From positions 124,001 to 188,000 of IMG/VR virus record IMGVR_UViG_3300028536_000014: 64,000 bases of DNA; one strand, given 5' to 3'. The notes beneath the pieces were generated by a model, which was not told the origin of the DNA, did no database searches, and saw nothing but the letters and a program-made list of their open reading frames with translations. Shown one piece after another: positions 27,353 to 60,640 of the stretch; the first letter of the stretch is position 1; each line of letters opens with the position of its first letter. A program made the position numbers and the translations under genes.

Positions 27353-27399
27353 GGTTTAGTTATCTCGTTGGTACCACAGAATCCCTCTTAGGAGTTAAG

Positions 27400-30300
27400 A
27401 TGCCTTCGCTTGTTGTTCCTCAAATCGAGTTGGATCGCCTGATTCAGTTAATATTGGATCATTACAAATTTCAATACGGAATCACCGTAACAGCCGACAC
27501 GATTACTGCTTCATTCATTCAACCTCGTGTCGGTTGGATAACAGGTTTTGAAATCGTCAGTAATAGTGATTCAGATAATTTTAGTTGTCGTTTTTATATT
27601 AACTATACTTCTGATTATAAATCAAATCTAGATCCTTTTCAGATTGAAGAAATCATTAACACATCTTATACATCCGGATTAGCGAATAATCGATATGTTT
27701 GCTATGCAGTTCTTCCCAGGACTCAGTTTCCAACACTATCTAAATATGTTTTTGTACCCGTAGACGACGGGGGTGGTGGAAGTCCAAGTACTTATACTGT
27801 AGGATTTCTACAAACAACCGGTAGTGTTGTTTCTGGTCAATCTCTTGACATCAATATTGGAATTGATAGCGCACCTTCTGCAATTGTTACAGCTCACTAC
27901 GCTTCTGCTAACGGAACCGCTGTAGCATCAGTAGACTATGTCGCTCTTGATGGAACTACAACGTGGGATGTTAATGATGGCGTTCAGAAAACAATTACAC
28001 TTTATACTGGTGAACCCTATTATTATCATTGGGTAGCCGGATATGATACATCGCAATTCACACTTGTTGACAGTGCCGATGGTCTTATTTATAATGCGAC
28101 GAATAACGATACCCAAAATACTTACTATCCAAGTATTCGCACTTTCAATCTCGCACTACCATCAGTAGATCAAAACTATTATCACGAGTTCTTATTTGGG
28201 CCTAATGGATTCCAACAGCATATAACTATTGAAATCGATATCAATACGGTCGATGGTAGCGGAAATACGAGTAGCTCATTTTACGCAGCGTATTTACAAT
28301 ACAATACAGGCACTAATGTATTTGATGCTCAAATCTATTCTACTTTTAATGGTCAAAATTTAACACCACCAAATCCAATTACGATGCCAGTTACCATTGG
28401 GTTCGAAATAAATCATGATTCGGCAATTAAGTTCTTTATTAATGATACTTGGTATAATGTCGATGACTTCAGTTTCAATTCTGATGCTTCTCAGATCGCT
28501 TTCTCTGATATGAGTTATCTATCTGGTTTGACAATTACGAGTGTTAATTTATTGATTACTTTTGATCTAACAACGAACGGTGGTGGATCAAATATCTTTG
28601 ATATGACTGCAAAGGTATCACCAAATCAAATCCATGTACCGTCAGATGCGATTAGTCCACCAGCTGGTTATATCGGAACGTCGGGTGGTACGCTAAGTCT
28701 CACGTTGAGTAATCCTAGCAGTAATGCTACAATTGGTACTACTACAGATAACATAACGATTTTAGATGCGAATGTTTGTTATCAGAAACTTATTGTGAAT
28801 GATGATGAAACCGGATTTGATAATTCAACTGGTTCCATCATAACAGGTTATGGTGGTATTCATTATCTCTATACGAATGTGAATTGGAGTAATACTACAT
28901 CAAGTTGTGGTGTTATTGCTGATCTTCGTTTAACTGCAACAAATGATCCAACTCAACTTGGTGTTACTGATTTTAGTCAGACGCCATTAACAGCAGCAGG
29001 AATTACTAACTTCCCAGTATTTCCAAACATCATGATCGATGATGTTCGAGAAGTTACTACGTTCTCATGGCCTAATGGTAAATTTCCAGTTTCTGGAAAT
29101 TTTAGTTTTAATACAACCGATAATGATCTTCCTTATAATCTTACCCTTAATTCAGATGGTAGTTATGAGGTAAAATTCAGATTCAGATCTTTCCCAATCT
29201 CTGGTCAAAGTAACTTGATGTATAAGTTAATGGATTATAATAATACAGATACGAAGGGTTCACTTCCTAAACTTAATAAACCCAGTCTATTAATCCAGTC
29301 TTATGACGGAACTAGTGCATACATCTTGATTTATTCAAACGATGTTTTATATGATCATACCGGTTCTGTAATTAACCAAGGTTATACTTTCACATATACA
29401 CTAGACGGCTCTGATCCTAATAGTGGTGGGTCAACCATTTCTTCAGGTAGTCAATTCCAGACTGCAGCTACTCCTGGAACGATTGTAAAATTTAAAGCAT
29501 CAGCTACAGGGTTCACTGATAGTGACGTATCAACCTGTACTTTGAACTACTTTACTCGTGATCTTACTTTCCCTTATTTGACAAATAGTATTTCTGGGAA
29601 TACAAATAACATTTTCTATTTCAATGCAGATGGACCATTTACTGGGTATGAAAGTATTCTGATTACACTTACTGATCAGAATTCTAGTCCTGGATCTGAC
29701 ACAATGGTATATTCTTTTGATGGAGAAACATGGCATGATTATACAGCACCATTTAGTTTCCCTGTAGGATGGAAAACTCCAATTGGTAAGGCTGGTTTTC
29801 CATCCGTATTTTACTATACCAAACAAGCAAATACACATACATCGAGTATTGCAAATCTTAATATCTTTATTGAATACCCCAGTCGTAATCTAACATTTGT
29901 TCCAAATCAAAATGATACAAGTGTTAGTGTTGCCAACAAAACAGTAACACTTGTCAATACAATTCACAACAATACTGAATTAGTTCCTGTTGCATATTTC
30001 CAAACACATGCAACATGTACGGATGATTTTCGTTATATCGAAATGAAATGTACCAATCTTGTTGATCAAGATGGAATTCTTCAGATTCATTTTAATTCTG
30101 TTGGATTTGGTCAAGACGGACATGTTTATCCGACCAATTATAGTCCTGTTAGTGTTCCAGCTCTTGCTTGGACTGTGGGTGATACACTTTGTTTCTGGTA
30201 TAATTATCTTAATGGATCGTTCCAAGTAAGAGTTAATAATGGTGCTTGGCAGAACACATCACAAGAATTGTTTTACACAACGTATTCTGAATTCAATATG

Positions 30301-30429
30301 GGAATTCAATATTTTGAGTCCAACGGTCATTCGTTGAATGGAAGTGCTTTCCAGCTTCATTCATTAGCGTCTGAATTTGAATTCGCTATTCCCTCTAACA
30401 CTCTTCCTACGGAAACTCTCACGCCATGA
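27400..30429 (+). CDS. modular adhesin / tail-fibre-like protein (Calx-beta, chitobiase-type Ig-like, SPRY/ConA-like domains)
   Basis: ATG 27400 with AGGAG SD; NGTAVASVDY (Calx-beta), YTLDGSDP (CHB_HEX_C_1-like), VGDTLCFWY...VRVNNGAW (SPRY-like). Confidence 0.7.
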   Translation: MPSLVVPQIELDRLIQLILDHYKFQYGITVTADTITASFIQPRVGWITGFEIVSNSDSDNFSCRFYINYTSDYKSNLDPFQIEEIINTSYTSGLANNRYVCYAVLPRTQFPTLSKYVFVPVDDGGGGSPSTYTVGFLQTTGSVVSGQSLDINIGIDSAPSAIVTAHYASANGTAVASVDYVALDGTTTWDVNDGVQKTITLYTGEPYYYHWVAGYDTSQFTLVDSADGLIYNATNNDTQNTYYPSIRTFNLALPSVDQNYYHEFLFGPNGFQQHITIEIDINTVDGSGNTSSSFYAAYLQYNTGTNVFDAQIYSTFNGQNLTPPNPITMPVTIGFEINHDSAIKFFINDTWYNVDDFSFNSDASQIAFSDMSYLSGLTITSVNLLITFDLTTNGGGSNIFDMTAKVSPNQIHVPSDAISPPAGYIGTSGGTLSLTLSNPSSNATIGTTTDNITILDANVCYQKLIVNDDETGFDNSTGSIITGYGGIHYLYTNVNWSNTTSSCGVIADLRLTATNDPTQLGVTDFSQTPLTAAGITNFPVFPNIMIDDVREVTTFSWPNGKFPVSGNFSFNTTDNDLPYNLTLNSDGSYEVKFRFRSFPISGQSNLMYKLMDYNNTDTKGSLPKLNKPSLLIQSYDGTSAYILIYSNDVLYDHTGSVINQGYTFTYTLDGSDPNSGGSTISSGSQFQTAATPGTIVKFKASATGFTDSDVSTCTLNYFTRDLTFPYLTNSISGNTNNIFYFNADGPFTGYESILITLTDQNSSPGSDTMVYSFDGETWHDYTAPFSFPVGWKTPIGKAGFPSVFYYTKQANTHTSSIANLNIFIEYPSRNLTFVPNQNDTSVSVANKTVTLVNTIHNNTELVPVAYFQTHATCTDDFRYIEMKCTNLVDQDGILQIHFNSVGFGQDGHVYPTNYSPVSVPALAWTVGDTLCFWYNYLNGSFQVRVNNGAWQNTSQELFYTTYSEFNMGIQYFESNGHSLNGSAFQLHSLASEFEFAIPSNTLPTETLTP

Positions 30430-35670: not shown

Positions 35671-36789
35671 TTATTCGTTATACAACTTGACCGCATTCTG
35701 AGCAAACAATTTCAGAAGCGTAATGGTAGTACCCAGGATATAAGGAGACATCACATTACGAGCTGCGATGGACCGACATCCAAAAACCGCATCGATTTCT
35801 TCACCTGCTTCTGTATAAAGTTTGTAATCCATGACTTCTGAGTTAACACTTTTCATTTGATTCGCGAAAACCACCTTATCAGCAATTCCCATATTCATGT
35901 TAACAGTGATATAGAAACGAATCTCGGCTTTATTCAAACCAAGCGGCGTTCCTTCAACACGATAATCGTCAGTCACTTCCCCAGTAAACTTGGGTTTATG
36001 GGTGCTTTTAGCTTGTTCAGAAATGAATTGATCGCTAAGATCAGCTAATTTACGGAGAGAAGAACTCATCTGTTCCTTATCACCGTGATAGAAGACCTCT
36101 ATACGATCCACAATTCCGAAATAATTGGAACGAGGAGATTGCTTAGAAAGACCTTTCAGTGTCTCAATAGCGTTCTCACCAAACGTTCCGATTTGAGATG
36201 TTATTTCATCTTCGACACTCATTAAAATGTCTTGTGGTTTAACAGTTTGAGAAGGTTTTACAACATGATGAATATTCTGTTCGAATGTCACCACAAAACT
36301 TCTCAAGTAAGTAACCCTAGTCTCAAGCTTCTCTGATAACTTTTTCGAAATAGAAGAAGCATCTTCATGAGTTTGTTTGGTTTCCCATAATACAGTTTTA
36401 GCTGTCAATGAGTTTTTCATCACAAGTTGACCAGGATTCCAAACATCATATTCGAAATAAGAAATGTTATAAGCAATGGGATCTCCCTTCTTAAAGGACT
36501 CCCCTTCCTTAACAGATGCTTCGATATCAAACGGAAAGATCGATCCTTCAGATCGACCAAACTGACGTCCTAATTCAACACCGATCATTTTACCACTTTT
36601 GTATTGAACAACAACACCTTTATCAGTTACCTTAGTAACAACACCATCCTCTTTTGCACAGTAAGCAAAAAGAGGATTTGTCCGTTGTGCAATAATCGAT
36701 TCAAATCCAGTTCTTACAAAAGGTGGGTGATATCCTTTTGCTGGAATGCCGTGACTATTCTGAATTGAGATGAAATTGATACGATTCAT
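35671..36789 (-). CDS. virion RNA polymerase beta subunit (gp178-like), exon 2
   Basis: NRINFISIQ, VRTGFE, HEDAS, ADKVVFANQMKS, IDAVF...SIAAR. Confidence 0.9.
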   Translation of the reverse strand: MNRINFISIQNSHGIPAKGYHPPFVRTGFESIIAQRTNPLFAYCAKEDGVVTKVTDKGVVVQYKSGKMIGVELGRQFGRSEGSIFPFDIEASVKEGESFKKGDPIAYNISYFEYDVWNPGQLVMKNSLTAKTVLWETKQTHEDASSISKKLSEKLETRVTYLRSFVVTFEQNIHHVVKPSQTVKPQDILMSVEDEITSQIGTFGENAIETLKGLSKQSPRSNYFGIVDRIEVFYHGDKEQMSSSLRKLADLSDQFISEQAKSTHKPKFTGEVTDDYRVEGTPLGLNKAEIRFYITVNMNMGIADKVVFANQMKSVNSEVMDYKLYTEAGEEIDAVFGCRSIAARNVMSPYILGTTITLLKLFAQNAVKLYNE

Positions 36790-37243
36790 CGAGAATATTC
36801 AAACAAACTCGCTAGGTCTGTTTCGCGCCATTACGCGCAGCTTTAGGTCTCCCTAAAGTCTAGGTCATATCTTCACCCACAGCTTAACCTGGTTGGGTGC
36901 TTCCCATTTCGGATCGCTTGATCCTACAGGCTGACAAAGCCCTGACCGTCGAACCTTCTCCATATCCGAAGACGTAGGAGCTTGGCTGCTGATTGTCTCT
37001 ACTCCGGGCTTTTCCAACCCTGGCTTTGTCTTTCGACTCGCAGTGGTGACCGGATTTGACGAGATGTTCCAGCAATTAAAGAAGATTCAACTGTAGATTT
37101 CTCTACAGTCGGACTATAGTACGAATAGATGTATCCATCGGGATAAACACCTTTGTTATTGTTGGTTCTAAACCCCATGTTAAGTGTGGTTTTCTTGATA
37201 TTGAATCAAGAAAAAATCAACAATAACAATTTACGTACGTTCA
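36790..37243 (-). mobile_element. group I intron (IA-like), 454 nt, no homing endonuclease
   Basis: Exon ends in U (GAT), intron ends in G. P AATTGCTGGAA 37067-77, Q AATCAGCAG 36986-94, R GTTCGACGGTCA 36943-54, S AAGATATGACC 36863-73; GNRA loops in P2 and P9; splicing restores HDD|MNR. Confidence 0.92.
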
Positions 37244-40200
37244 ATCGTCGTGCATTGCACCCGCTGCTAAAAGAACAGCCGAACAGTGTCGATTAGCATT
37301 TTGGACTTCCGCATCATGATTCTTAAGACCACGATGATTACGAAGATGAGGATCTGAAGAGGTATAGATATTAACACCCACATCAGAACTATCTACAGTT
37401 CCTTCAGAGATTACACCGACATCTTGAACATGAAAAGATCGAGAAGCTTTATTCATTCCATCAGAAGAACGACCGCCTTCTCCAACATAGGTTACACTTT
37501 CATCATTCTTAATGTCTTGAATCGGATTGATTTCAGGAACTAACATTACAGTTGGATCACTGTTGATAGCTGACCAGACCTTATAAGGACTGATATCAAT
37601 CTTACTTCGACCTGCTATGTTCTTACTCCGGAACTGACGAATAGCTGCCGTCATTTCTTTATAGACAGCACCAGAGAAACGTTCATATCCTCGAATACGT
37701 GTATAGGAACCATCGTATTCTTTTGGATGTTGATATGACATTAACATTTCAGTAGCTTTCAAAAGTAATCCATCGAAAGTCACTGGTTCATTCATGTCTT
37801 TTAATATTTCTTCAGTGATAGGATCGATGAAATAATCAAACAACATATCAATCTCACGAAGATAGATTGCACCTAGACCTTTACTGGTTAAGAGATTCAT
37901 GTAGATATCTTGATGTTCAAAATCCTTAACACTTGCCGATTTCGTCATCTTGGCATAATCTAAGAATCCAGCCAGTATCATTGTTGCAAAGTGATTTTTA
38001 CGAGAGAAGATATAAACACCGTCATTAAACGGAATGGGATATTCATCTGGCGTAAGATTCAATCGTTTCTTTGGTTCAACAAAACGTGGTTTGACTTCCA
38101 ATAAAGCTAGAAGTTTAGACCACCCCAATCGGTAACCTAAAATCACACCTACTGGCACATTTTTGCGAAAGATTGCTAATTCACTAAAACGAATAGGTGA
38201 GTTATGAGGATCCAAATTAAGAACTTTAAAGATATCCCCAAAAAGTTCTAATTTTCCTTCTTTTAAAATATAAAAGTCATTATTCATATCAACCCAAAGA
38301 AGTCCGTTATCCGGAGCATGTCCACACCACCGCATACCTTCTCTAGGAGATGACATCCTAATATTCTTACCGTTATCGCACATCAAAGAAAAGCCTCCTG
38401 CTTTAAAGGAGACGAAGCTTGTTGAAAGTAAACCGAAGATATAAGGTATCTTGGCATAAGAATCAAAGGTATTACCAGGTACTACATCTTTGATCCATTC
38501 ACTACCTTCAAAAGAAGCCTTATTGATTTGCTTTAAGATCCAATCAGAAGTGCTATTTGCAATTTTACTTTCCGAAGAAACAAATGCTTTTCCATAGTAG
38601 CTATTCAGAGAGACTTCGTTCGGACTGATCTTACGAATCGGTAAGTCTGCACGATTCTTTCTAAGCATATAACGGTTACCCGCTACCTTAAACGAACCGT
38701 CATGTTCAACGACTGGAAGTTTAAACCAAATTGAAGAAGCAGTACCATTGATAGGTTTCAATTGTAGATTATGAATTTCTACATTTCCCATCACGGTATG
38801 TTCTTGAGTGATCTCATGTTTTTGAATAATGACACCACCCTTCTGAAGACCACCCACCATTTTAATAACATCATTCTTCATGTGTTCATCGATGTAATCA
38901 CGAGTATAACTCTGAAGTGTACTTTGAGTCATGCTCTTATCAATGATAGTTGGATGATCGGCTAACTGTGTCTCACTTGAATGAATGATCAGTTGTTCTG
39001 GATGGATTTCAGTCTTTTGAGCTGTTAAATTACCACTACCATAAGGGTCTAACATCTTAATATAAGCATCGGCATCTTGAAGCGCTTTCTTATAAGAAGC
39101 AGCATTCAATGTTCCATCTTCTAATGCTTCGACCATTTTCTTCTTTAAGGCATTATTAGGTATTAATGCTGTATGAACTTCTTCATGAATATCTTCGTGG
39201 TTATAAACTGTCGTAGGATGAACTTCTACAACTTCGTTATCTTTTAATGAAATACCACGCTTATGAAGATCAAAACGATTCTTTTGTTCCAGAATCTCCA
39301 TATCGTCATTCAGATTCTGGATGATATTATCGCTAAGTTCATCGATTGCATCGATAGATTTCAAAGGTTCTTGAAACTTCTTTTCTATAGGGGGGGTTAT
39401 ATTCTTTTGTTGAAAACTTTCGATCGGACCTTCGTCGATGTAATCGTGTTCATCATTATGATCTTCAATCTCTTCAACAGTTTCTTCTGTCTGAGGAATA
39501 GTTTCAGCTGCATCTTCAGGAATCGCAGAAGAAATAACCAATAGGTATTTAAGTAAAGCTCTAACCATGATCTTACGATCACGTTGTAAAGATACTTTAA
39601 TCGTAGAGACGTTTTCATCACCTTTGATCCAACTATAAAAGTACGAAAGGTTCAAAGTGCTACAACGTCCATCTGCTAACATGAAAACCATGTTAATCTT
39701 CTTCAGTGCTTCAATAGGAATCAAATTGAAAACACTACGATCTCTCAACTCGTCTTTGATAAAATTAGACAAATGAAGAATCAAACGTTTCTCATGAGTA
39801 TTAAATAAACGAGCTAACGTCATACCTTCTTTATCAGAATAATTCAACAACATGTTATAACTGGGGATATTAATGATTGGATCCAAAAGAACAAAATGTT
39901 GACGATTAGATTTTAATGCCAATGCACCAATATGTGACCAGAATGTTTTCTGATAACTCTCCCATTTCTGATATTCGGAAATGGGAGTATGAACATATCG
40001 ATATGTGAATTTCAATGGATTGTAATCCACCACAATCATCGTACGTTCATCAATTTGTATGTCAGATGCTCGAGGAATATAACGAAACAGATTATGTTTC
40101 TTGATGAATGGTAGAATAAAACGTTGTGGAACAAACGGAAGTGTTCTTGGATGCCCTTCCATTAAGTCACTGTGATAAACCAGTTCTAAAGGAAGACGTT

Positions 40201-40378
40201 TGCTATATCCTTGAAAATAAGGTTTTGATGCATCTGGAAACATTTCATCATCTTGAGTGAAATGATGCAACATTGAATTACGAGGAAATCCTTTAAAGAT
40301 TTGAAGACGTGGAGATATCAGTTCGTTAAAACGACGTACTCCTGTCTCACGGTAAAATTGCGTATAAAGTTGTAACAT
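37244..40378 (-). CDS. virion RNA polymerase beta subunit (gp178-like), exon 1
   Basis: DLPIRKI, LNSYYGK, RIRGYER, GEGGRS, GVISEGTVDSSDVG; ends MHDD; spliced product 1417 aa. Confidence 0.9.
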
Positions 40379-42064: not shown

Positions 42065-45000
42065 ATGGCTAAACAAAAGAAGAGTCGTATTGATAATGGA
42101 GATTTCAGGTTTGATAGTGAACTTGACTTCAATTTTGATGGTGGTTTCGATACTTTCGATACTAAGAAAGCAAGTAAGAAACGCAAACCTGTTCATGATG
42201 TTATACGTGGTACTGCTGATGCTACAAAGAGCAAACTAAAGTCAGGATCTTTCTGGAACGACTTTGCCAAGAAGGCATTACCAAAGTCTTATAGCATTAT
42301 CACTGATGAACTTAAGAAGTCAAGTGAAATTCTTTCGGAAACATATCGAGAATCAGCTCGTCTCTTAAAACCCGACTTAGCTCGTATTGGTCGGCAAGTT
42401 GATTCATTGGTTCCTGAAGAATCTCGTCGAATCAAGAAATGGACCAATAAACTCAAATCGCATCAGGAACAGAATATTTCTGCATCTGCAGAAGCATTTC
42501 AAAATCAGGCTATTACTCAAGCTCAGACAGAAATCTTTGGTCGTATGCAAGATCATACCGATGCTAAGGAAGCTAGAGATCGTGCAGAACAGCGTGTCAA
42601 AGATAAGTTAGATGCCAAACGATTCTCTGCTAATGCAAATATTCTCGGTAATATTAACGAAGGTATTCAGAGATTGGCTTCGTATACAATGTCAGTGAAC
42701 TCTTCTTATCAGAAGAAATCATTAGAACTTCAGTATCGTTCTTATTTCGTTCAAGCTGAACTTTTAAAAACTACAACGAAATATAACGAACTCTTTAAAG
42801 CCTATTTTGAGGCCATCAAGGATAATACTGCACTTCCTGACTTTGTGAAGATTACAAAATCTGAACGTTTTAGAGAAATTGCTAGAACTAATATTTATTC
42901 AGGTATTCAGCAAGGTATCTCTGGAGGTTTTAAACGAGCAACAAAACGACTGGGTGGTTATGTTAGAGGAGCTGCTGGTCGTTTAGGTGATATAACAATG
43001 GGTCTGGACTCTGTTGATATGTTAAGAGACCAGATGAAAACTGCAAAAGAAATGGGCATAGACGAGTCTATGCTTTATCATAGTTCAAATGGAATAGGTG
43101 GTGCTCTAATAGATTTCATTGCAAGCAAAGCAGGTAAGAAATTAGGGCGCTTTTTTCCACAAGGTGGGTTTGTCTCTCGTAATCTAGCACGAGGTGCAAG
43201 GTTTGTTAAAAACCCAACCCAAGGAATTGATAAACTTCAAAAATCAAAAGGCTATCAGAAATTCATAAATCAGAAAGGACCTATGGGTGACTTTGCTCGT
43301 TTTATGAATATGTTTGTTAATGATTTTAAAACTCCTAAAGAAAATGCTAACTTAACCAAGGGTGGAGATTCTGCTGGACATATGACACCACACTTCTTCA
43401 GTCAAAAAGCTCATAAGTCTTTGACTGAAGTGATTCCTGGTTATTTGGCTCGTATTCTTCAAGAAACATCAGCGATCCGAATGGGCAGTCGTAATTTAGG
43501 ACAATTGCCTACTTATGATTGGAGACGGGGTAGGTTTACAACATCAAGTAAACTTCAATCAAAAATTCGTACTGGACTTCTTGGAGTATCTTCAACAGGA
43601 GCAATGGATTATAAACTGGACCAGGTTTCAAAAGCTTTTACTGGTAATGAATTAACAGGTGATCAATCTGTTCGTGTTAAACAGTTTATACACACGATCT
43701 CAGGCAATCCTGAAATGGATTATAACTCCAATAAAGTATTTCGGAGTAAAGCATTTCTAACACTTCCTCGTGAAGATCGTCGAATGATTATTACACAGAT
43801 GAAAAAGCATCGTGGTAGTCAAGAAGCCAAAAGTGTTATTACCAACGTAATGCGTGATGTTGGTGAAACACATAGTAATCAGATAGCTGCTGCTAAGAAT
43901 ATGATGCAACAGTTAATTCAAGAAGGTCATCAAGAAGAATTAATTCGTGCTAAATTAATTAGACCCAATAAACAAGGTGGGTATGATATTAATCTTCAGA
44001 AATATAATCAACTTATTCAGTCTCGTGGAATTACAGCTAAAGGTATTGCTCCTAAGAAAGCAAGTGGTTGGATTATTCCAACGAATGAGAAAGGCGAGCA
44101 TGAGAATATCGGAGATATAGAAGGTAAAATCTACGATACAAGTAAGAAACGTTATATGCATGATCCGAATTATACACCTGATCCGGACAAGAAACCGTTC
44201 ATGACGTTTTCTGATCGTAATGCTAAAACTAATATCGGTAAAAACCGTCGTCGTGGAGTGTTAAGTCGACTGGCTCGATTGGCAACTTATAAATATCGTT
44301 ACCGTGGTGGTAACGATAAGAATCAACACCAAGGATTTATGGCTCAGGAAGTCAATAAAACTTTTGGTGATAATGCTGCTCCTGGCGGGACTGCAGTTGA
44401 CATGAGTTATATGACATCGATGAATACTGAAGGTATACAGGAACTTCATCGTGATCAACAGAAACAGATGAAAGATCCAACATCGATCGATCTGTTACGA
44501 GACATTAGTAAACGTCTTGGTGAATTAGGAGCTATCAGTAAGGTTGGTATGGGTATTGAACCTACTGGTGATTCAAAGAGTTTATTTGGCGATACCGCTA
44601 ATCTTGCAAGTCGTTATATTCGTATTTTAGCAAGTAGAGGTGCAGCTGGAACTGGACGTGCTGGTCGTTTACTATTTGGAACTGCTGGTGCTATCGGTCG
44701 TCTTGTTCGTCGTCATGGTGGAGGATTACTCTCTAATGTCGGTGATCTTGCAGGAGAATATGGTCCGTCAGTAGCACATCAAGGCATATCTGGATTAGGT
44801 CGTGGTGGTCGATTCTTACTTGGAGCGACAGGCGGTCTTTTCGGTGCAGCTGGTGGTGTTGGACGTTTAACCAGAAGAGCACTTGGCCGTTATGCTAGAC
44901 CAGCAATATCAAGTACTGCTGGGTTTATAGGTAATCATCTCTTTGACGGTTTAGGTCGAATGGGGGATTTCTTAACGGGTAGTGCTAAATTAGGAGGGCG

Positions 45001-48000
45001 TGCTCTTGGTGGTTTAGGAGGCGGTCTTCGTTCCATATTAGGAGGGTTCGGTTCAGGTAAAACGAACAAAACTCTTGAAAAGATACTTGGAATATTGAAG
45101 AAATGGGATAAGCGAGGAATGGGTGGTGGTATGAGTGGAGCATCTCCCACAACAGCTGCCGCAGCTGCGATGGATAGTGACGATACATCATCAGTAGGAG
45201 GATCTGGACAAGGTTTTGCTGCTATGGGAGCAGTTAGTTCCGGACTTCGCGGACTGCGTAATATTATCGGTGGTCCTAAAGCACAAGCTCTATTTGGACG
45301 GTTTAAAGGTCTGAAAGGTATTAAACGTTTAGGTGGTTTAGGAGGCGGACGTCTAGGCCGTTGGGGTGGTGGATTGATGAGTGGGCTAGGTTCCTTATTT
45401 GGAGCTGGAGCGTCCGATGAATCTCACGACCCATCGGACCCACAACAAGCTGCTACCAAATCACCCGGACTATTTTCTCGTCTTATGAATTCCGTTAAAC
45501 GAGTCTCTACAGGTCCGGCCGCTGAACTTAATCCAGAGGGTGAAAAAGGACGTCGTGGAGGTGATTGGCGTACTCGTCTGGAAAATATGAAAGGTGGTTT
45601 AAATAATCAAGGTCCTGCTATTATTGCGGGTCCAAGATACCAAGAAAATACTGGAGGTGGTATCTTCGGTTTACTTAAAGGTTTTACCAGTTTCTTAACA
45701 GGTAACTTAGGCAGTATCTTCAGTTTCGCTAGAGGAACGTTAGGTAAACTAGGCGGGGTTGGTGGACGACTTGCAGGTATGTTGGGTAAAACTCGTCTAG
45801 GAGCTGCTGCTGGTAATTTACTTGGAAAAGTAGGAGCCCCTGTTCGTTCAGTATTAGGACGAGTAGGCGCTAGATTAGGTCTTAGTGCGGCTGCTGATGC
45901 GGTAGGTGCTACAGCTGCAGAAGGTGCTGTTGCAGCAGGTGCTGAAGCAGTTGTAGGAGCGGGTGTAGCCGAAGCAGGTATTGGAATCGTGGGTGCTGGT
46001 TTAACAGCCTTAGGTGCGATCTTTGCTTCTCCTTTTGTCCTCGGTGCCTTAGCTGTTGGTGTAGTTGCTTATGGAGGTTATAAACTCTTTAAGTATTTAA
46101 CTCGCGACAATCTTGACGAGTTCCAGAAATTCCGGTTTATGCAATACGGCTTTGGAACTTCATCAACGGAAAGCTATAATCATAAACTAGCAAATTTGGA
46201 AAACTATCTGTTAGATGGTAAAGTCGCTTATCAACCAGCGCCTGGTTCTACAGATAAAAAGGCTTATATCTTAGGTAAAAGTGTGGTTGCTGAAGAACTC
46301 TATAAAGTCTTTGATGTTGATCCTACTAATCGAGATCAAGTCTATCCATTCCAGATCTGGCTCAAAGGACGGTTCCTTCCGTTCTTCTTAAATACCATGA
46401 CTGCATTGTATAATACAAATCAGAAAGTCAAATTAGATAAATTAGATAAATTGACTCCGGATGAGAAACTTAAATTCTTGAAGGCAGCACAGTTCGATGG
46501 TGGTCCTTATAACCTTCTTGATAGTCCTGTTCCGACAGAAGTCATTTCTCTCTCTTCTAATAAAGAGGCGGTGAATAAACAAGTTGAATTCTTAATCGGC
46601 TCGGCTTCGTATGACAAAAAGAAACAACATGCACAAGCAACGAATTTAACTAAGCAAGATAAAGCCATTCTTGCTAACAAAATGGCTGCTGAAACAGCAG
46701 CACAAACTAAGAAAGTAACTCAAGACACGCTAAACGCAGCTAAAGACAAAGTCTATCAGACACGTTTAGATACCGTTACTCAAAACGGTAATCAGGTTTC
46801 CAATAATGGTAAACTACCTAGTGTTGTTAATACTGAAGCTGAAGGTTCAGTATTAGGTAAAGGTTCTGGTGGTACCGCTCTTGATCCTAGTGCTGTAGGT
46901 GGCACAAAGGGTGGTACGTCTAACCTAACATTGGCAGCAGGTGCTATCTTAGATGGCAATGGTGCAATGAAGTATATCAAACTGAAAGATCAGTCAGTGA
47001 CTTTCGATGGCGTCAATCCATCTGTTCTTAAGAACTTTATGGGAATGGTTCAAGAGTATGGTGATGCCACAGGTAATAGTGTTCAAGTCAATTCTGCTTA
47101 TCGTAGTCTTCAAGAACAGATTGCCGAATATCAAAAGAATCCAGGTAAAGCTGCAAGACCCGGTGGAAGCATGCATGGGTTTGGTTTAGCTTTAGATGTG
47201 AATTCTAAAGATGTCGATGCATTGGAAAAGATGGGTCTTATGCGCAAGTATGGATTTACTCGTCCAGTAGGAGGAGAAACTTGGCATATAGAACCAGCTG
47301 GTGTTCAAGAAAATATTGCATTAGCAAAATCAAATCCGAATATGGCAACTCAGATGACAGACGCTTCTTTACTTAAAGGTGGTGGTGGACTTGGCTCTAT
47401 AGCTGGTAGTCCTATGGGTAAACGAGATCGTGATCTTCAAGTTGCTATTTTGAATGCGGATTCACAACCAGCGAATAATACAACTGCAGGTTCTGCAGCA
47501 GGTAAGTTATCAAATTTAACAACACCCGCTACTGTTCCTACTGCTGCTAATGATAAGACGTACAATGCGTCTTCAGCAGTTGCTAAATTAGGAAATCAAA
47601 ACCTTGCTCCAATGACTAATACGACAGGTAATAAGTCATTGAACGTAGTCAAGAATAATCAATACACCATGGATGTTTCACCGAAAACTTCTTTCGATAC
47701 TGAGAAAGGTTCTCCCAGTACTCAAGCGGGTGGAATGGGAAGTGATAATGCTGATGGTAGTAACTTTACCATGGATCGTGATGGTATCTTAAAAGCCATT
47801 GATGTTAATGCTAAGAAAGCGGGTGTGGATGGTAAACATATGCAAGTAATTGCAGCAGTTGAATCAGGTCTTGATCCTCAAGCGCGTGCTTCTTCTACAG
47901 GAGCATCAGGATTATTCCAATTCGAAGCAAGTACTTGGAATGAATCCATGCGCAAGTATGGAAGTAAATACGGTTTATCAGGTAACGAGTCTCCTAGCAA

Positions 48001-48766
48001 TATTGGAGCGAGTACCGTTCTGGCAGGCGAATATATGAAGTCGAACCTGCAAGCTGTTAAACAAGCTAATCCTCAAGCTGGAGTTGTTGATGCTTACCTT
48101 GCACATTTCTTAGGTGCAAGTGGAGCACGAACATTTCTACATTCAAATCCACAAGCGATCGGAGCACAAGTTTTCCCAGGACCTGCTAAACGTAATCCTG
48201 GCATCTTCTTTGAAGGTGGACGTGCTTTAACGATCGCAGAAATTTATACGAAGATTGGTAATCGTCTTGATACTGCCGCTAAGTCTTTTGGAATTAGTGG
48301 TGTAACGATTTCTAAATCATTCCCTAATTTACCATCAGGTCGAACCGGAATGATACCCGCTGTAGCGATGAATCAAAGCGTTGTGGGAACTTCAGCTGCT
48401 GTGTTTAGAGCACCAGCTTCTCCTGCAACTGGCGATTACCAATCTTCTCAAGGAATGACACCTGTTTATCAGCCACCGAAACAGATCGCTGCATCTTCAC
48501 CGGTTTATACTTCTAATCGGAGAGATAGTGATCGTATTGAATCGGGTCCAACACCGTTGGATAACATGGTTATCATTGCAGGAAGTACTTTAAATATTCA
48601 ACAGAAGTCGCTCGATACTATGATCGAGATCCGTGATTTAATTAAGACTTTCGTAAGTATGAAGTCTGGCTCATCAACATCACCGGTTATAGCTGCTCAA
48701 CAACCGAGTAATGCTGACGTTATTCAGCCAATGATTAATACTTCTCGTACACGAAATGTAACTTAA
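42065..48766 (+). CDS. tape-measure / tail-associated lysin (gp181-like) with internal S74-like, M15 peptidase and lytic transglycosylase domains
   Basis: YQKKSLELQ, IPGYLARIL, Gly/Ala-rich region with TM; SDRNAK...GFMAQEV; SAYRS...SMHGFGLALD...WH; AVES...ASGLFQF...YLAHFLG. Confidence 0.88.
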   Translation: MAKQKKSRIDNGDFRFDSELDFNFDGGFDTFDTKKASKKRKPVHDVIRGTADATKSKLKSGSFWNDFAKKALPKSYSIITDELKKSSEILSETYRESARLLKPDLARIGRQVDSLVPEESRRIKKWTNKLKSHQEQNISASAEAFQNQAITQAQTEIFGRMQDHTDAKEARDRAEQRVKDKLDAKRFSANANILGNINEGIQRLASYTMSVNSSYQKKSLELQYRSYFVQAELLKTTTKYNELFKAYFEAIKDNTALPDFVKITKSERFREIARTNIYSGIQQGISGGFKRATKRLGGYVRGAAGRLGDITMGLDSVDMLRDQMKTAKEMGIDESMLYHSSNGIGGALIDFIASKAGKKLGRFFPQGGFVSRNLARGARFVKNPTQGIDKLQKSKGYQKFINQKGPMGDFARFMNMFVNDFKTPKENANLTKGGDSAGHMTPHFFSQKAHKSLTEVIPGYLARILQETSAIRMGSRNLGQLPTYDWRRGRFTTSSKLQSKIRTGLLGVSSTGAMDYKLDQVSKAFTGNELTGDQSVRVKQFIHTISGNPEMDYNSNKVFRSKAFLTLPREDRRMIITQMKKHRGSQEAKSVITNVMRDVGETHSNQIAAAKNMMQQLIQEGHQEELIRAKLIRPNKQGGYDINLQKYNQLIQSRGITAKGIAPKKASGWIIPTNEKGEHENIGDIEGKIYDTSKKRYMHDPNYTPDPDKKPFMTFSDRNAKTNIGKNRRRGVLSRLARLATYKYRYRGGNDKNQHQGFMAQEVNKTFGDNAAPGGTAVDMSYMTSMNTEGIQELHRDQQKQMKDPTSIDLLRDISKRLGELGAISKVGMGIEPTGDSKSLFGDTANLASRYIRILASRGAAGTGRAGRLLFGTAGAIGRLVRRHGGGLLSNVGDLAGEYGPSVAHQGISGLGRGGRFLLGATGGLFGAAGGVGRLTRRALGRYARPAISSTAGFIGNHLFDGLGRMGDFLTGSAKLGGRALGGLGGGLRSILGGFGSGKTNKTLEKILGILKKWDKRGMGGGMSGASPTTAAAAAMDSDDTSSVGGSGQGFAAMGAVSSGLRGLRNIIGGPKAQALFGRFKGLKGIKRLGGLGGGRLGRWGGGLMSGLGSLFGAGASDESHDPSDPQQAATKSPGLFSRLMNSVKRVSTGPAAELNPEGEKGRRGGDWRTRLENMKGGLNNQGPAIIAGPRYQENTGGGIFGLLKGFTSFLTGNLGSIFSFARGTLGKLGGVGGRLAGMLGKTRLGAAAGNLLGKVGAPVRSVLGRVGARLGLSAAADAVGATAAEGAVAAGAEAVVGAGVAEAGIGIVGAGLTALGAIFASPFVLGALAVGVVAYGGYKLFKYLTRDNLDEFQKFRFMQYGFGTSSTESYNHKLANLENYLLDGKVAYQPAPGSTDKKAYILGKSVVAEELYKVFDVDPTNRDQVYPFQIWLKGRFLPFFLNTMTALYNTNQKVKLDKLDKLTPDEKLKFLKAAQFDGGPYNLLDSPVPTEVISLSSNKEAVNKQVEFLIGSASYDKKKQHAQATNLTKQDKAILANKMAAETAAQTKKVTQDTLNAAKDKVYQTRLDTVTQNGNQVSNNGKLPSVVNTEAEGSVLGKGSGGTALDPSAVGGTKGGTSNLTLAAGAILDGNGAMKYIKLKDQSVTFDGVNPSVLKNFMGMVQEYGDATGNSVQVNSAYRSLQEQIAEYQKNPGKAARPGGSMHGFGLALDVNSKDVDALEKMGLMRKYGFTRPVGGETWHIEPAGVQENIALAKSNPNMATQMTDASLLKGGGGLGSIAGSPMGKRDRDLQVAILNADSQPANNTTAGSAAGKLSNLTTPATVPTAANDKTYNASSAVAKLGNQNLAPMTNTTGNKSLNVVKNNQYTMDVSPKTSFDTEKGSPSTQAGGMGSDNADGSNFTMDRDGILKAIDVNAKKAGVDGKHMQVIAAVESGLDPQARASSTGASGLFQFEASTWNESMRKYGSKYGLSGNESPSNIGASTVLAGEYMKSNLQAVKQANPQAGVVDAYLAHFLGASGARTFLHSNPQAIGAQVFPGPAKRNPGIFFEGGRALTIAEIYTKIGNRLDTAAKSFGISGVTISKSFPNLPSGRTGMIPAVAMNQSVVGTSAAVFRAPASPATGDYQSSQGMTPVYQPPKQIAASSPVYTSNRRDSDRIESGPTPLDNMVIIAGSTLNIQQKSLDTMIEIRDLIKTFVSMKSGSSTSPVIAAQQPSNADVIQPMINTSRTRNVT

Positions 48767-58499: not shown

Positions 58500-59174
58500 T
58501 TAACACGAACACGGAGCTGGATATGTACCTAACACCCACCCAGTATAAGTATTGATAACGCGATCGAAACAACCTTGTGGTGTTTGAATACGTTGTCGAA
58601 GAATACCATCGCCAATGAAAACTTGACACATGACGATACCACTACCGAATTGAATTGGAATCAAACGAGGTTGTTCGTGATGTGTGTCACTAACCCATAA
58701 AGCATTTGTAGTATGTGGTTGTAATGCATTTTCAGAATCATGAAATGCATTACTTCCAATATCTGTTTTGCCGGATGTTAATACTGCAACATCTGACCAT
58801 GCTACCCAACGATATTGAAATTGTTGCCAACCTGGACGTTTACCTCGAAGTAAAACATCTCCGGTATTGCAAACAGCCGATGAAATCTGAACACCTTCTT
58901 CCGTTGTGACAGAAGTGAAAATAGTTTTCTGTACACAATCGAAATTGATTTGCCATAATGAAGCTTGTACTTTGGCATCATCTACTCGACTGATAGGAAC
59001 CCCCAGTTGCCACGACTCTATCGCTTTAATGACAGTAGGAATGGCTCCCATAAGAGAAATAGCGAGGGTTGGATAGATTAGAAACCATTGCCACCATCGA
59101 TTGATCTTAGGTGTTGGGGCTGGACTCTCGGGAACAGGTGTCTCGGATACCACTTCAGTAACTGAATCGTTCAT
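58500..59174 (-). CDS. single-TM, Cys-containing exported protein
   Basis: RWWQWFLIYPTLAISLMGAIP segment; six Cys; ATGA overlap with uvsX. Confidence 0.7.
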   Translation of the reverse strand: MNDSVTEVVSETPVPESPAPTPKINRWWQWFLIYPTLAISLMGAIPTVIKAIESWQLGVPISRVDDAKVQASLWQINFDCVQKTIFTSVTTEEGVQISSAVCNTGDVLLRGKRPGWQQFQYRWVAWSDVAVLTSGKTDIGSNAFHDSENALQPHTTNALWVSDTHHEQPRLIPIQFGSGIVMCQVFIGDGILRQRIQTPQGCFDRVINTYTGWVLGTYPAPCSC

Positions 59175-60640
59175 TTCCCTTTCCTCAAAAATTGCTTCTT
59201 AACGGTTTTGTGGTCGTCTTCCATCCAGTATGGACAATAGTTACCAGCTGACATTTCAAGCAAGTCTAATGAACTGAGATAGTAATCTCCAACACTTTCA
59301 TTACTATATGTCCACCACCCTCGTGTGTTTTCAAGAATAAAATCAACGTCATAACCCTGTGCTTTAAGTCCAGTATAAAGTGCATCAGCTGTCATCAATT
59401 TCTCACCGATATAAGGTTTCTGAAACTGATACATCTGAGCCAGTTCTGAAGTGATATTCAAAGCACGACGTAGTTTTCTTGATTCATCGATCTTCTGTCG
59501 AACTGTTGTTCTTTGAAGTGTTTCTTCAGGAAATAGAAATAATCGATAGGTTCGATCGTTTCCATCAAATCCAAAAGATTCATAATCCTTCAGTAAGTTG
59601 AATTCAGTGAGAGAGGGCAGAACACCTTCCGACTGAGATACCACGATATCCAATTTGAACCCATTCGGACCCGCGTTACCACGGATGTGTTGGAGAGAAA
59701 CAAGATTAAGGTCAGTATCACCAACCACTGCCTGACCTTGTAACTTAGGGAATTTTGGTGTTTTGTCATCTTTATTCCAAAGCAAACCACAATTTGTAAC
59801 AAGCCATAAATTGTGTTGTTGATAGAGAAACTGTCCAGTAACACCTTTAATCTTGGTGTCGGTATTCAGGAATTGAAGTTGCTTCTTAGGAGGGGCTTGA
59901 CCTGGACCTGATGACATGGTGTTATTAGCACCAATATGAGCTGTTGCCAGAATATAATGTTTAGAAGCTGCTCCTAGAGAAGGAAGTTCATGAAGCATTT
60001 GGGCTTTACCTAAACCTTCTCTCATAAATAAATGAGAACCAGATGAATCACCGATATTGTTTTTATCCATTATATCAGCAGCTGCATTAATATGCATGGC
60101 AGAGATACTATCTAACTCGCTGAAAGTTGGAACCAATTCTGTAGCACGTTTACCTTCTTTGTTATTGAAAGGTAAATTAACTTGGAACTGTTTAGCATTC
60201 TTTCGTTTGTCATGCATGAATTCGCGAAGCTTTGAGTACCACTCATCGGCTAAATAAGCAGATGAATCTGAAATAACCCAAGATCCTTCATCAATAAGAT
60301 CGATATTACTGAATTGAGGAAATTGACACATAAATTTCTTTAACCACTGAGTATGAATATTCGTTTCACTATCATACGTCGAACAAGAGGTTTCAGTAGC
60401 AGTCCAAATTTTAGCCATCGCACTCAGGAGCTGATAATGTAAGATAGTAGACTTGTACATCTTACCAGGCCCAACAATGGCCGTTAATGGACCCAAACCA
60501 CCCATCAGAACCCATTCACCGTAAATGCCACGAACCCAATATCCTGTTGGAATATCAAGTGTAGCGCCAATGTTAATCAACGTCTTATGCTGATCAATTG
60601 GTTTAAACCCTGGCTTCAGAATCATTTTTATTTTTCTCAT
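59171..60640 (-). CDS. uvsX: UvsX/RecA-like recombinase (phiKZ gp152-like)
   Basis: INIGATLDIPTG, P-loop GPGKMYKST, YDSE, ELDSIS, SQSEG. Confidence 0.85.
   Translation of the reverse strand: MRKIKMILKPGFKPIDQHKTLINIGATLDIPTGYWVRGIYGEWVLMGGLGPLTAIVGPGKMYKSTILHYQLLSAMAKIWTATETSCSTYDSETNIHTQWLKKFMCQFPQFSNIDLIDEGSWVISDSSAYLADEWYSKLREFMHDKRKNAKQFQVNLPFNNKEGKRATELVPTFSELDSISAMHINAAADIMDKNNIGDSSGSHLFMREGLGKAQMLHELPSLGAASKHYILATAHIGANNTMSSGPGQAPPKKQLQFLNTDTKIKGVTGQFLYQQHNLWLVTNCGLLWNKDDKTPKFPKLQGQAVVGDTDLNLVSLQHIRGNAGPNGFKLDIVVSQSEGVLPSLTEFNLLKDYESFGFDGNDRTYRLFLFPEETLQRTTVRQKIDESRKLRRALNITSELAQMYQFQKPYIGEKLMTADALYTGLKAQGYDVDFILENTRGWWTYSNESVGDYYLSSLDLLEMSAGNYCPYWMEDDHKTVKKQFLRKGK

What the first reader, a model, noticed from the sequence alone, without database searches (positions are those of the whole stretch)
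44210..44470. Self-cleaving intramolecular-chaperone (Peptidase_S74-like) module in the middle of the tape-measure/lysin protein
Seen: residues ~716-800 of the 2233-aa ORF read SDRNAKTNI...LARLATYKYRY...HQGFMAQEV...AVDMSYMTSMNTEGIQELH. Known: S74 chaperones of endosialidases and tail fibres have a Ser-x4-Lys dyad (SDxxxK), a YxY strand, G(F/L)IAQE(V/L) and a closing coiled coil; they drive trimerisation, then self-cleave at the Ser, and normally sit at the C-terminus. Inference: here ~1430 aa follow the module, a layout more like MYRF. Autocleavage would split a ~715-aa N-terminal fragment from a ~1500-aa fragment carrying the TM segment and both cell-wall hydrolases. That could be an assembly- or ejection-triggered processing switch. 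I do not recall this for phiKZ gp181.
Basis: partly seen in the sequence, partly recalled or inferred. Interest (0 to 1): 0.82.

Follow-up and report, generated by a model that had tools for sequence, protein, structure and literature searches.

The report
Self-cleaving S74 module inside phage tail lysin
A giant tail protein of an uncultured soil jumbo phage carries, one third of the way along, a genuine "intramolecular chaperone" domain with its self-cutting residues intact, so the protein is probably trimerised and cut in two during tail assembly, an arrangement shared by over 130 metagenomic relatives but absent from phiKZ and every cultured relative examined.

Summary
Window 44210-44470 encodes aa 716-802 of a 2233-aa ORF (42065-48766, +). 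Pfam places Peptidase_S74 (PF13884) at aa 716-768, at 34 bits against a cut-off of 22.

A predicted structure of aa 640-860 has a core pLDDT above 90. Its best matches are solved or predicted S74/ICA domains (MyRF 7DC3, GA-1 3GUD, endoNF 3GW6). The Ser716/Lys721 dyad and the aromatic pair Y744/Y746, at +28 and +30 from the serine as in MyRF, are present. They are invariant or nearly so in every homologue that carries the module.

The host protein is the positional and sequence orthologue of phiKZ gp181, lying between virion-RNA-polymerase genes and a gp182-like gene. phiKZ gp181 and 14 other cultured chimallivirus orthologues lack the module. It is present in 46 of the 120 nearest metagenomic homologues and in 137 long proteins overall, always internal.

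Best reading: trimerisation-dependent self-cleavage at F715|S716. This would give an 81-kDa helical N-fragment and a 158-kDa fragment with the Gly-rich region, hydrophobic hairpin, M15 peptidase and SLT lysin. Cleavage and its role are inferred, not shown. I class it as a new variant of a known kind, of moderate interest.

The parts
42065..48766 (+). Whole gene: 2233-aa gp181-type tail lysin / putative tape-measure protein (238 kDa)
   Evidence: ORF list. phrog_3201 matches aa 1-898 with E 2e-144. Colinear BLASTP to phiKZ gp181 in three blocks. Synteny with gp178/gp180-like virion RNA-polymerase genes and a gp182-like gene.
42065..44209 (+). Predicted N-terminal cleavage product, aa 1-715 (80.8 kDa). 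All-helical, with very long helices at aa 42-420, then a well-predicted globular domain at aa ~447-660 and a short variable linker.
   Evidence: AF2 model with mean pLDDT 69, and 85-95 for aa 450-660. No solved-structure relative: Foldseek E > 0.7. This is the most conserved part of the family.
44210..44212 (+). Ser716 codon: predicted nucleophile. The scissile bond is F715|S716.
   Evidence: Ser in 133 of 133 non-gap rows of long homologues. An SDxxxK motif in 47 of 47. Equivalent to MyRF S587 and endoNF S911, where cleavage is N-terminal to the Ser (PMC8326128).
44225..44227 (+). Lys721 codon: predicted general base of the Ser-Lys dyad (Ser+5)
   Evidence: Lys in 137 of 141 non-gap rows. Same spacing as MyRF S587/K592.
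44294..44302 (+). Y744-R745-Y746: aromatic pair at +28 and +30 from the Ser, matching MyRF Y615/Y617 that line the 'cutting hole'
   Evidence: Sequence. W or Y in 139 of 141 rows at position 744, and Y in 138 of 139 at position 746. The role of the MyRF residues is from PMC8326128.
44210..44548 (+). S74 / intramolecular-chaperone auto-processing module, aa 716-~828. It comprises the SD..K strand, a beta core, the GFMAQEV helix, the AAPGG loop and C-terminal helices.
   Evidence: Pfam PF13884. AF2 core pLDDT above 90. Foldseek top hits are 7DC3, 3GUD and 3GW6, and BFVD top hits are S74 proteins. PDB profile hits.
44549..45946 (+). Gly/Ala/Arg-rich low-complexity region, aa ~829-1294 (19-30% Gly)
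   Evidence: Composition in 100-aa bins. Not alignable to the S74-less sister protein P0006.
45947..46090 (+). Hydrophobic stretch, aa 1295-1342, long enough for a transmembrane hairpin
   Evidence: Kyte-Doolittle 19-residue window peaks at 2.2. The equivalent segment aligns with phiKZ gp181 aa 1292-1350.
47000..47299 (+). M15/VanY-type peptidoglycan peptidase domain, aa ~1646-1745
   Evidence: PF02557 at 22.8 bits, cut-off 25. Motifs SMHGFGLALD at aa 1702 and ETWH at aa 1738. Homologues P0006 and P0020 pass the cut-off.
47777..48268 (+). Lytic transglycosylase (SLT) domain, aa ~1905-2068, with the catalytic E-S motif at aa ~1934
   Evidence: PF01464 at 31 bits, cut-off 21.3. 32% identity to phiKZ gp181 aa 1878-2047.

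Best explanation
[quoted passage not shown] It sits between the conserved helical N-terminal domain and the Gly-rich, hydrophobic and lysin-bearing remainder of the gp181-type tail protein of an uncultured soil chimallivirus-like jumbo phage.

Most likely mechanism:
1. Three copies of the protein come together during tail assembly.
2. The ICA modules fold into the interlocked trimer.
3. Only then does the Ser716/Lys721 dyad cut the bond F715|S716.
4. This leaves an 81-kDa N-fragment (aa 1-715) and a 158-kDa C-fragment (aa 716-2233). The C-fragment starts with the ICA knob and carries the hydrophobic hairpin, the M15 peptidase and the SLT transglycosylase.

The cut would let the lysin and membrane-inserting part leave the tail at infection without staying covalently tied to the N-terminal part.

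Shown: domain identity, fold, catalytic residues, their conservation, position, and distribution among relatives.
Inferred: trimerisation, the cleavage itself, that both fragments stay in the virion, and the purpose of the cut.

My confidences: it is a true S74 domain, about 0.97; it self-cleaves in vivo, about 0.7; the cut uncouples the two halves for ejection, about 0.35.
For: - Pfam PF13884 above the gathering score.
- PDB profile hits to 8JOV, 3GUD and 7DC3.
- AF2 core pLDDT above 90, and the ten best PDB fold matches are all S74/ICA chains (7DC3, 3GUD, 3GW6).
- The best BFVD matches are S74-type viral proteins (chaperones of endosialidase, tail fibres, neck appendages), all with probability 0.95-1.00.
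- SDxxxK is present in 47 of 47 module-bearing homologues.
- In the larger set of long homologues, Ser is 133/133, Asp 133/133, Lys 137/141 and Y746 138/139. Such invariance of a dyad that only matters for catalysis argues that cleavage is under selection.
- The spacing of Ser, Lys and the aromatic pair equals that of MyRF S587/K592/Y615/Y617. There, S587A and K592A abolish cleavage, and cleavage needs the trimer (PMC8326128).
- The module is always at the same junction, aa ~650-900, with a median of 1641 aa after it, in 137 long proteins.
- The flanks are colinear with single-ORF phiKZ gp181.
Against: - No protein-level data exist. The phage is uncultured and known from one soil metagenome run.
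- Only monomer models could be made, so the trimeric 'cable through donut' geometry was not tested.
- Foldseek E-values are weak (1e-2 to 1e-3), although they are family-consistent.
- Canonical phage S74 modules act on a beta-helical or fibrous stalk directly upstream. Here the upstream part is mostly helical, and only two short, low-confidence strands (aa 688-699) precede the site.
- Related proteins manage without the module: phiKZ, 14 other cultured phages, and the sister P0006. Whatever it does is therefore dispensable or replaceable.
Confidence: 0.7

Rival explanations
1. Trimerisation or folding module only. The S74 domain nucleates the trimer of the tail-lumen protein but does not cut, or cuts inefficiently, and the protein works full-length.
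For: - MyRF trimerisation is driven mainly by the C-terminal helices of the ICA domain, independently of cleavage (PMC8326128).
- S74-less orthologues such as phiKZ gp181 work as one chain.
- Some homologues have 16-90-aa insertions between the SD..K strand and the core (P0016, P0028, P0032, P0035), which might disturb the active site.
Against: Ser, Asp and Lys of the dyad motif are invariant or nearly so in all 133-141 informative rows. Even the insertion-bearing homologues keep an SDxNxK copy. A purely structural module would be expected to lose these residues in some lineages.
Confidence: 0.2
2. MYRF-like membrane-tethered release. The hydrophobic hairpin anchors the trimer in a membrane, and ICA cleavage then frees the N-terminal trimer as a soluble factor that enters the cell with the DNA.
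For: - The layout of N-domain, ICA, then hydrophobic segment parallels MYRF.
- The best fold match is the MyRF ICA domain.
- The N-fragment has a confidently predicted globular domain of unknown function at aa 447-660.
Against: - About 470 aa of Gly-rich spacer separate the ICA module from the hydrophobic stretch.
- No DNA-binding or other recognisable domain was found in the N-fragment.
- ICA cleavage in known cases follows folding immediately, so timing it to infection would need an extra control that nothing here indicates.
Confidence: 0.08
3. Artefact: a canonical tail-fibre-like gene ending in S74 has been fused to a downstream lysin gene by misassembly, a sequencing error or a missed stop, or the match is a chance motif.
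For: The closest S74 modules outside the family sit at the C-terminus of ~370-aa virion proteins, phrog_8003. A fusion event is therefore the likely evolutionary origin.
Against: - The frame is uninterrupted.
- 137 independent long proteins from many samples share the same architecture.
- Both flanks are homologous to one phiKZ gene.
- The Pfam E-value is 3.6e-8.
Confidence: 0.02

Closest known systems
C-terminal intramolecular chaperone domains of phage tail spikes and fibres (endosialidase endoNF 3GW6, GA-1 neck appendage 3GUD, T5 L-shaped fibre pb1; MEROPS/Pfam S74, PF13884)
   Same: Same domain family by HMM and fold. It shares the Ser-x4-Lys dyad at the start of the module, the aromatic strand, the conserved MAQ-type helix (GFMAQEV here, GPMAQDV in most relatives) and the closing helices.
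   Different: Those modules are at the extreme C-terminus, act on a beta-helical or fibrous stalk, and are discarded after cleavage. Here 1433 aa follow the module, including the functional lysins. The part upstream is mainly helical, and the module would stay attached to a functional fragment.
MYRF / MrfA ICA domain (7DC3)
   Same: Internal position, a hydrophobic segment downstream, identical Ser/Lys/aromatic spacing, and the best fold match. The predicted logic is the same: trimerise, then cut, then separate an N-terminal trimer.
   Different: There is no Ndt80-type DNA-binding domain, and the host is bacterial-viral rather than eukaryotic. A 470-aa Gly-rich spacer precedes the hydrophobic stretch. 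The C-terminal fragment is enzymatic (M15 + SLT).
phiKZ gp181 / SPN3US gp239 / 201phi2-1 gp276 (chimallivirus tail-associated lysin, called tape measure in SPN3US)
   Same: Orthologous by N-domain, hydrophobic-region and SLT homology, by size (2233 vs 2237 aa) and by gene neighbourhood.
   Different: None of the 15 cultured orthologues examined has an S74 module, using a family HMM with all filters off at E up to 10. The window protein also has an M15 peptidase that Pfam did not detect in phiKZ gp181.
Processing of other tail-lumen or hub proteins (T4 gp5 cut into lysozyme and needle parts; lambda gpH and T5 pb2 tape-measure maturation). From my own knowledge, not tested here.
   Same: A trimeric tail protein carrying a cell-wall hydrolase is cut during assembly, and the pieces are released at infection.
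   Different: As far as I recall, those cuts are not made by an S74 domain. Here the protease would be built into the substrate.
phrog_8003 virion structural proteins (~370-390 aa) of mid-sized phages
   Same: They carry the closest S74 modules outside the gp181 family, with profile E 1e-25 to 1e-30.
   Different: Their module is at the C-terminus (canonical layout), and the rest of the protein is unrelated.

Membership tests
Peptidase_S74 / ICA (CIMCD) domain | Profile match above the curated threshold | tested here: met
   PF13884 at 34 bits against a cut-off of 22, E 3.6e-8, aa 716-768, profile positions 1-54 of 58. The family profile hits 8JOV, 3GUD and 7DC3.
Peptidase_S74 / ICA (CIMCD) domain | Ser-x4-Lys catalytic dyad at the N-terminal edge of the module | tested here: met
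   S716 and K721. Ser 133/133 and Lys 137/141 among long homologues, and SDxxxK in 47/47. Equivalent to MyRF S587/K592 and endoNF S911/K916.
Peptidase_S74 / ICA (CIMCD) domain | Aromatic residues around the scissile bond (MyRF Y615/Y617) | tested here: met
   Y744 and Y746 lie at +28 and +30 from the Ser, the same spacing as in MyRF. They are conserved as W/Y (139/141) and Y (138/139). The equivalence rests on spacing and alignment, not on a trimer structure.
Peptidase_S74 / ICA (CIMCD) domain | Characteristic fold: small beta core plus C-terminal helix or coiled coil | tested here: met
   AF2 core pLDDT above 90. The ten best PDB matches are all S74/ICA chains, the best being 7DC3 at probability 1.00 and TM 0.51 on the target. 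BFVD matches are S74 proteins at probability 0.95-1.00. E-values are modest because a monomer was modelled.
Peptidase_S74 / ICA (CIMCD) domain | Homotrimerisation, required for activity | not testable with these tools
   Only monomer prediction is available.
Peptidase_S74 / ICA (CIMCD) domain | Autoproteolysis N-terminal to the Ser | not testable with these tools
   Needs protein expression or virion mass spectrometry.
Canonical phage C-terminal chaperone (released after cleavage) | Module at the extreme C-terminus, discarded after maturation | tested here: not met
   1433 aa follow aa 800. In 137 relatives the median is 1641 aa after the module.
gp181-type chimallivirus tail lysin | Homology of the N-terminal domain, the hydrophobic region and the SLT domain to phiKZ gp181 | tested here: met
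   phrog_3201 E 2e-144. BLASTP blocks 29-564, 1258-1505 and 1905-2068 against phiKZ gp181.
gp181-type chimallivirus tail lysin | Conserved neighbourhood: two virion-RNA-polymerase genes upstream on the opposite strand and a gp182-like gene downstream | tested here: met
   Window ORFs compared with phiKZ and 14 other cultured phages. The neighbourhood is conserved in the large majority; Halocynthia phage JM-2012 departs from it (no separate gp180-like CDS, gp182-like gene on the opposite strand).
gp181-type chimallivirus tail lysin | Location in the tail and a length-measuring role | not testable with these tools
   SPN3US gp239 is called tape measure and is missing from tailless particles (PMC5105663). 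gp181 does not appear in the searched text of the phiKZ atlas.
MYRF-type membrane-bound transcription factor | Ndt80-like DNA-binding domain N-terminal to the ICA domain | tested here: not met
   No such Pfam hit and no fold match for aa 1-715. The resemblance is in layout and mechanism only.

The most novel reading that the evidence does not exclude
The internal S74 module is a built-in, trimerisation-gated switch. It converts one gene product into two separately acting virion components. One is a membrane-inserting lysin/channel fragment. The other is an N-terminal trimer, with an unknown globular domain at aa 447-660, that is delivered into the cell. This would be a phage counterpart of MYRF processing and possibly close to the source from which eukaryotes obtained that logic.
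Probability: 0.12. Interest if true: 0.8.

Novelty: new variant of a known kind. Interest (0 to 1): 0.55.

Why it matters
S74 chaperone domains are known as disposable C-terminal caps of phage fibres and spikes, and as the internal self-cutting device of the eukaryotic factor MYRF.

Here the same device, with all catalytic residues conserved, sits inside the largest tail protein of a broad, so far uncultured branch of phiKZ-like jumbo phages. It lies between the most conserved domain and the part that must attack the cell wall and membrane.

If it cuts, it gives a concrete and testable answer to how this 240-kDa protein is trimerised and matured. That protein was not mentioned in the text I searched of the phiKZ and Goslar virion structure papers. 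It would also supply a phage example of the MYRF-type internal layout.

The presence/absence pattern, which needs at least 8-10 changes on the family tree, offers natural controls. The 137 homologues give many candidates for expression.

I found no paper describing this. The one comparative study that mentions S74 in jumbo phages assigns it to a different group (PMC7824862).

Tried and rejected
1. Megablast of 2 kb around the site against 50,697 phage records found no match. The phage has no close cultured relative.
2. tblastn of two different S74 segments (the window's and P0017's) against the phage records found only mid-sized-phage virion proteins and no jumbo phage.
3. A relaxed HMM search for a degenerate S74 in the 74 module-less homologues, and in 15 cultured gp181 loci, found nothing above noise. 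Presence or absence is clean.
4. I looked for natural 'split genes' that would mimic the cleavage. P0148 and P0151 have the module near the N-terminus, but both lie at contig ends, so they are truncations and not evidence.
5. A fold search of the N-terminal fragment against the PDB gave no meaningful match: E > 0.7, probability <= 0.06.
6. Literature searches gave no report on any of these: S74 with tape measure, intramolecular chaperone with tape measure or jumbo phage, gp181 cleavage, or the Goslar and phiKZ virion structure papers.
7. The chance-motif and assembly-artefact readings were rejected (see rivals).
8. Read laying was not used, because read depth cannot inform on protein cleavage. 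The one holder run is probably the source sample.
Full report
**Observation.** The window has one long ORF at 42065-48766 on the + strand, 2233 aa. This is aa 716-802. Pfam-A places Peptidase_S74 (PF13884, 'chaperone of endosialidase') on aa 716-768, covering profile positions 1-54 of 58, at 34 bits against a gathering score of 22 and E 3.6e-8. The same scan finds SLT (aa 1912-2000, 31 bits, cut-off 21.3) and VanY/M15 (aa 1651-1719, 22.8 bits, just under the cut-off of 25). The M15 signature motifs SxHxxGxAxD (aa 1702) and ExWH (aa 1738) are intact. A 19-residue hydropathy scan finds a single strongly hydrophobic stretch, aa 1295-1342. It is preceded by about 470 aa with 19-30% glycine.

**What the host protein is.** PHROGs assigns aa 1-898 to phrog_3201 (E 2e-144), a family labelled 'tail fiber protein'. 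tblastn of the first 962 aa finds 173 phage records, all at under 60% identity. By organism name they are phiKZ-like jumbo phages of Pseudomonas, Erwinia, Serratia, Ralstonia, Vibrio and others, and the matches end near aa 650.
- BLASTP against phiKZ gp181 (2237 aa) gives three colinear blocks: N-domain 29-564, hydrophobic region and its sequel 1258-1505, and SLT 1905-2068.
- The neighbours match too. Upstream on the opposite strand are two virion-RNA-polymerase genes (phrog_3148 and phrog_2986, the gp178 and gp180 types). Downstream is a phrog_3181 gene in the position that gp182 occupies in phiKZ. The same order holds in phiKZ and in nearly all of the 14 other cultured phages examined; Halocynthia phage JM-2012 departs from it.
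- The window also encodes PhuZ tubulin, a tail sheath, a DNA polymerase and a large terminase.
- The DNA is held by one soil-metagenome run and has no near relative among cultured phages.

So this is the gp181 orthologue of an uncultured soil chimallivirus-like phage. The 'tape measure' label comes from SPN3US gp239 (PMC5105663). Term searches of the phiKZ atlas (40 proteins, tail 2000 Å) and of the Goslar structure paper found no mention of this protein, so its place in the tail is still inferred.

**Is the module a real S74 domain?** A profile of aa 640-860 with 43 homologues hits the solved chains 8JOV (tail fibre), 3GUD (GA-1 neck appendage chaperone) and 7DC3 (MyRF ICA). AlphaFold2 on that alignment gives a mean pLDDT of 77, with 88-97 over fragment residues 90-170 (protein aa ~729-809). 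The model shows two short strands, the helix at GFMAQEV, and two long closing helices. Foldseek against the PDB returns only S74/ICA chains in its first ten places: 7DC3 at probability 1.00, then 3GUD, then 3GW6. Against BFVD, the named top matches are chaperones of endosialidase, tail fibres, neck appendage proteins and similar, all at probability 0.95-1.00. E-values are modest (1e-2 to 1e-3). That is expected when a monomer model is compared with domain-swapped trimers.

**Catalytic equipment.** In MyRF the cut is between P586 and S587. S587A and K592A abolish it, Y615 and Y617 line the site, and cleavage occurs only in the trimer. S587/K592 correspond to endoNF S911/K916 (PMC8326128). The window protein has S716, K721 (+5), Y744 (+28) and Y746 (+30), the identical spacing.

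**Conservation.**
- Of the 120 nearest homologues in the 5.8-billion-protein collection, 40 carry a precomputed PF13884 tag.
- An iterated HMM finds the module in 46 of them, always at aa ~650-900 of 2000-3600 aa.
- The other 74 score at noise level even with all filters off.
- All 47 module-bearing proteins, counting the window, keep an S-D-x-x-x-K motif. Some have two or three copies of that strand, or a 16-90-aa insertion after it.
- A profile search of 1.84 billion cluster representatives gives 18,126 S74 hits at E <= 1e-3. Of the best 150, about three quarters are proteins over 1900 aa with the module at aa ~650-900.
- Pooling all fetched proteins, 137 long proteins have more than 1000 aa after the module (median 1641), and 31 short ones have it at the C-terminus.
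- In the long proteins Ser is 133/133, Asp 133/133, Lys 137/141, W/Y744 139/141 and Y746 138/139. The GPMAQ, AAPGG and D779 positions are nearly invariant.

Residues that matter only for catalysis have thus been held fixed across a family whose members are otherwise 20-55% identical. This is the main argument that the cut really happens.

**Distribution and history.** phiKZ gp181 shows only SLT in Pfam. A family HMM run with all filters off over six-frame translations of 15 cultured gp181 loci finds nothing. The 15 are phiKZ, FLC9, Totoro, Noxifer, Centimanus, FLC4-4C, LucasX, RP12, PCH45, Halocynthia JM-2012, pir03, PhiEaH1, Lh1B, Ea35-70 and 201phi2-1. The window scores 107 bits in the same search, and it holds no second S74 gene. 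tblastn with two different module sequences also finds no jumbo phage.

On a maximum-likelihood tree of the first 600 aa (121 rows), the module needs at least 8-10 gains or losses, against 37 for shuffled labels. Forty of the 47 bearers lie in one starred 53-row group. The tree is unrooted and was made with the quick method, so gain and loss cannot be told apart. In the module-less sister P0006 the alignment to the window protein stops at aa 685 and resumes at aa 1147. The whole segment of S74 plus the Gly-rich region was therefore exchanged, not neatly deleted.

The nearest modules outside the family sit at the C-terminus of ~370-390-aa proteins of phrog_8003 ('virion structural protein'). 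This fits an origin by fusion with, or capture from, a canonical C-terminal module.

**The two predicted fragments.** Cleavage at F715|S716 would give aa 1-715 (80.8 kDa) and aa 716-2233 (157.7 kDa). The N-fragment model is all-helical, with helices up to 68 residues long in aa 42-420 at low to moderate confidence. A confidently predicted globular domain follows at aa ~447-660 (pLDDT 85-95), and then a variable linker with two weak strands just before the site. It has no relative among solved structures. The upstream partner is therefore not the beta-helical stalk seen in endosialidases or MyRF. In several homologues only about 7-25 residues separate the last conserved helix from the Ser.

**Mechanism proposed.** Three chains associate, and the ICA modules fold and interlock. 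The dyad of each chain then cuts the bond before its Ser. The result is two trimeric pieces. The C-terminal piece begins with the ICA knob and carries everything needed to cross the envelope: the Gly-rich region, the hydrophobic hairpin, the M15 peptidase and the SLT.

From general knowledge of tape-measure proteins (T5 pb2, lambda gpH) and of T4 gp5, proteolytic maturation and release of a lysin-bearing tail protein at infection is a familiar theme. Here the protease would be built in. I put the probability that the module cuts in vivo at about 0.7. I am less sure (about 0.35) that the purpose is to uncouple the ejected C-terminal part from the N-terminal part.

**Rivals.**
- A trimerisation-only role (0.2) is weakened by the invariance of the dyad.
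- A MYRF-like membrane-tethered release at infection (about 0.1) is not excluded and would be the most interesting outcome.
- Artefact or chance (0.02) is refuted by the open frame, the flanking homology and 137 independent examples.

**Comparison and novelty.** As a domain it is a member of S74/ICA: the profile, dyad, aromatic pair and fold tests are all met, while trimerisation and cleavage could not be tested here. It fails the 'C-terminal, discarded' feature of canonical phage chaperones. It works like MYRF in layout but is not a MYRF relative in any other domain.

I found no publication on an S74 domain in gp181-type or tape-measure proteins. The jumbo-phage survey of Iyer et al. mentions S74 only for 'group 2' phages and tail fibres (PMC7824862). 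Forty of the homologues do carry an automatic Pfam tag in the protein collection, so the architecture is visible to anyone who looks, but it is unnamed.

I class it as a new variant of a known kind. Interest is 0.55: a specialist would find it unexpected but not shocking, since S74 modules are promiscuous in phage tail proteins, and it makes the maturation of this large, structurally unresolved protein directly testable.

Noticed in passing
window 36841-37130 (-), between ORFs 35671-36789 and 37241-40378: The gp178-type virion RNA-polymerase gene is split into two ORFs matching phrog_3148 positions 3-1050 and 1051-1422. The gap holds a full-length group I intron (Rfam RF00028, 60.4 bits, gathering score 50, E 2.9e-14). 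201phi2-1 annotates a similar interruption of its orthologue.
   Followed up: partly
window 6629-9196 (+), about nt 8414-8839: The large-terminase ORF (855 aa) matches terminase profiles at aa 1-214 and 591-667. It contains a Hint domain (PF13403, 30.3 bits, cut-off 28.4) and a sub-threshold Intein_splicing hit at aa ~596-737. This is probably a mini-intein.
   Followed up: partly
window 2431-3426 (-), 14817-17348 (+), 21545-23671 (-), 59171-60640 (-): PhuZ tubulin, tail sheath, DNA polymerase and a UvsX-like recombinase. These support a nucleus-forming (chimallivirus-like) jumbo phage. The chimallin gene itself was not looked for.
   Followed up: no
window 27331-30429 (+) and 24293-25417 (-): A 1032-aa ORF and a 374-aa ORF have no PHROG match at E <= 1e-5.
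   Followed up: no
homologues P0031, P0045 (three copies); P0009, P0026, P0081 (two copies); P0016, P0028, P0032, P0035 (insertion): The N-terminal S74 strand carrying SDxNxK is tandemly duplicated in some relatives, or separated from the core by 16-90 aa. If each copy were cut, these proteins would release small peptides. The meaning is unknown.
   Followed up: partly
proteins P0162, P0163, P0176, P0186, P0236 and about 25 others: The closest S74 modules outside the gp181 family belong to ~370-390-aa phrog_8003 'virion structural proteins', with the module at the C-terminus and a Q/N/G/A/S-rich middle part. tblastn with the S74 segment also hit CDSs in ~60-kb phages such as Erwinia phage Pavtok, Sinorhizobium PBC5 and Achromobacter CF418P1 (annotated 'virion structural protein' or 'hypothetical protein'); whether these belong to phrog_8003 was not tested.
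   Followed up: partly
window 43403-44044 (aa 447-660 of the ORF): A confidently predicted globular alpha/beta domain (pLDDT 85-95) sits inside the otherwise helical N-terminal part. It contains the family's invariant IPGYL motif (aa 457-461) and has no solved-structure relative.
   Followed up: partly
window 47000-47299: An M15/VanY peptidase domain lies upstream of the SLT domain. Pfam did not detect it in phiKZ gp181, but it is present in many metagenomic homologues. Other relatives carry glycoside hydrolase 19, NlpC/P60 or amidase domains instead, so the lysin cargo is swapped freely.
   Followed up: no
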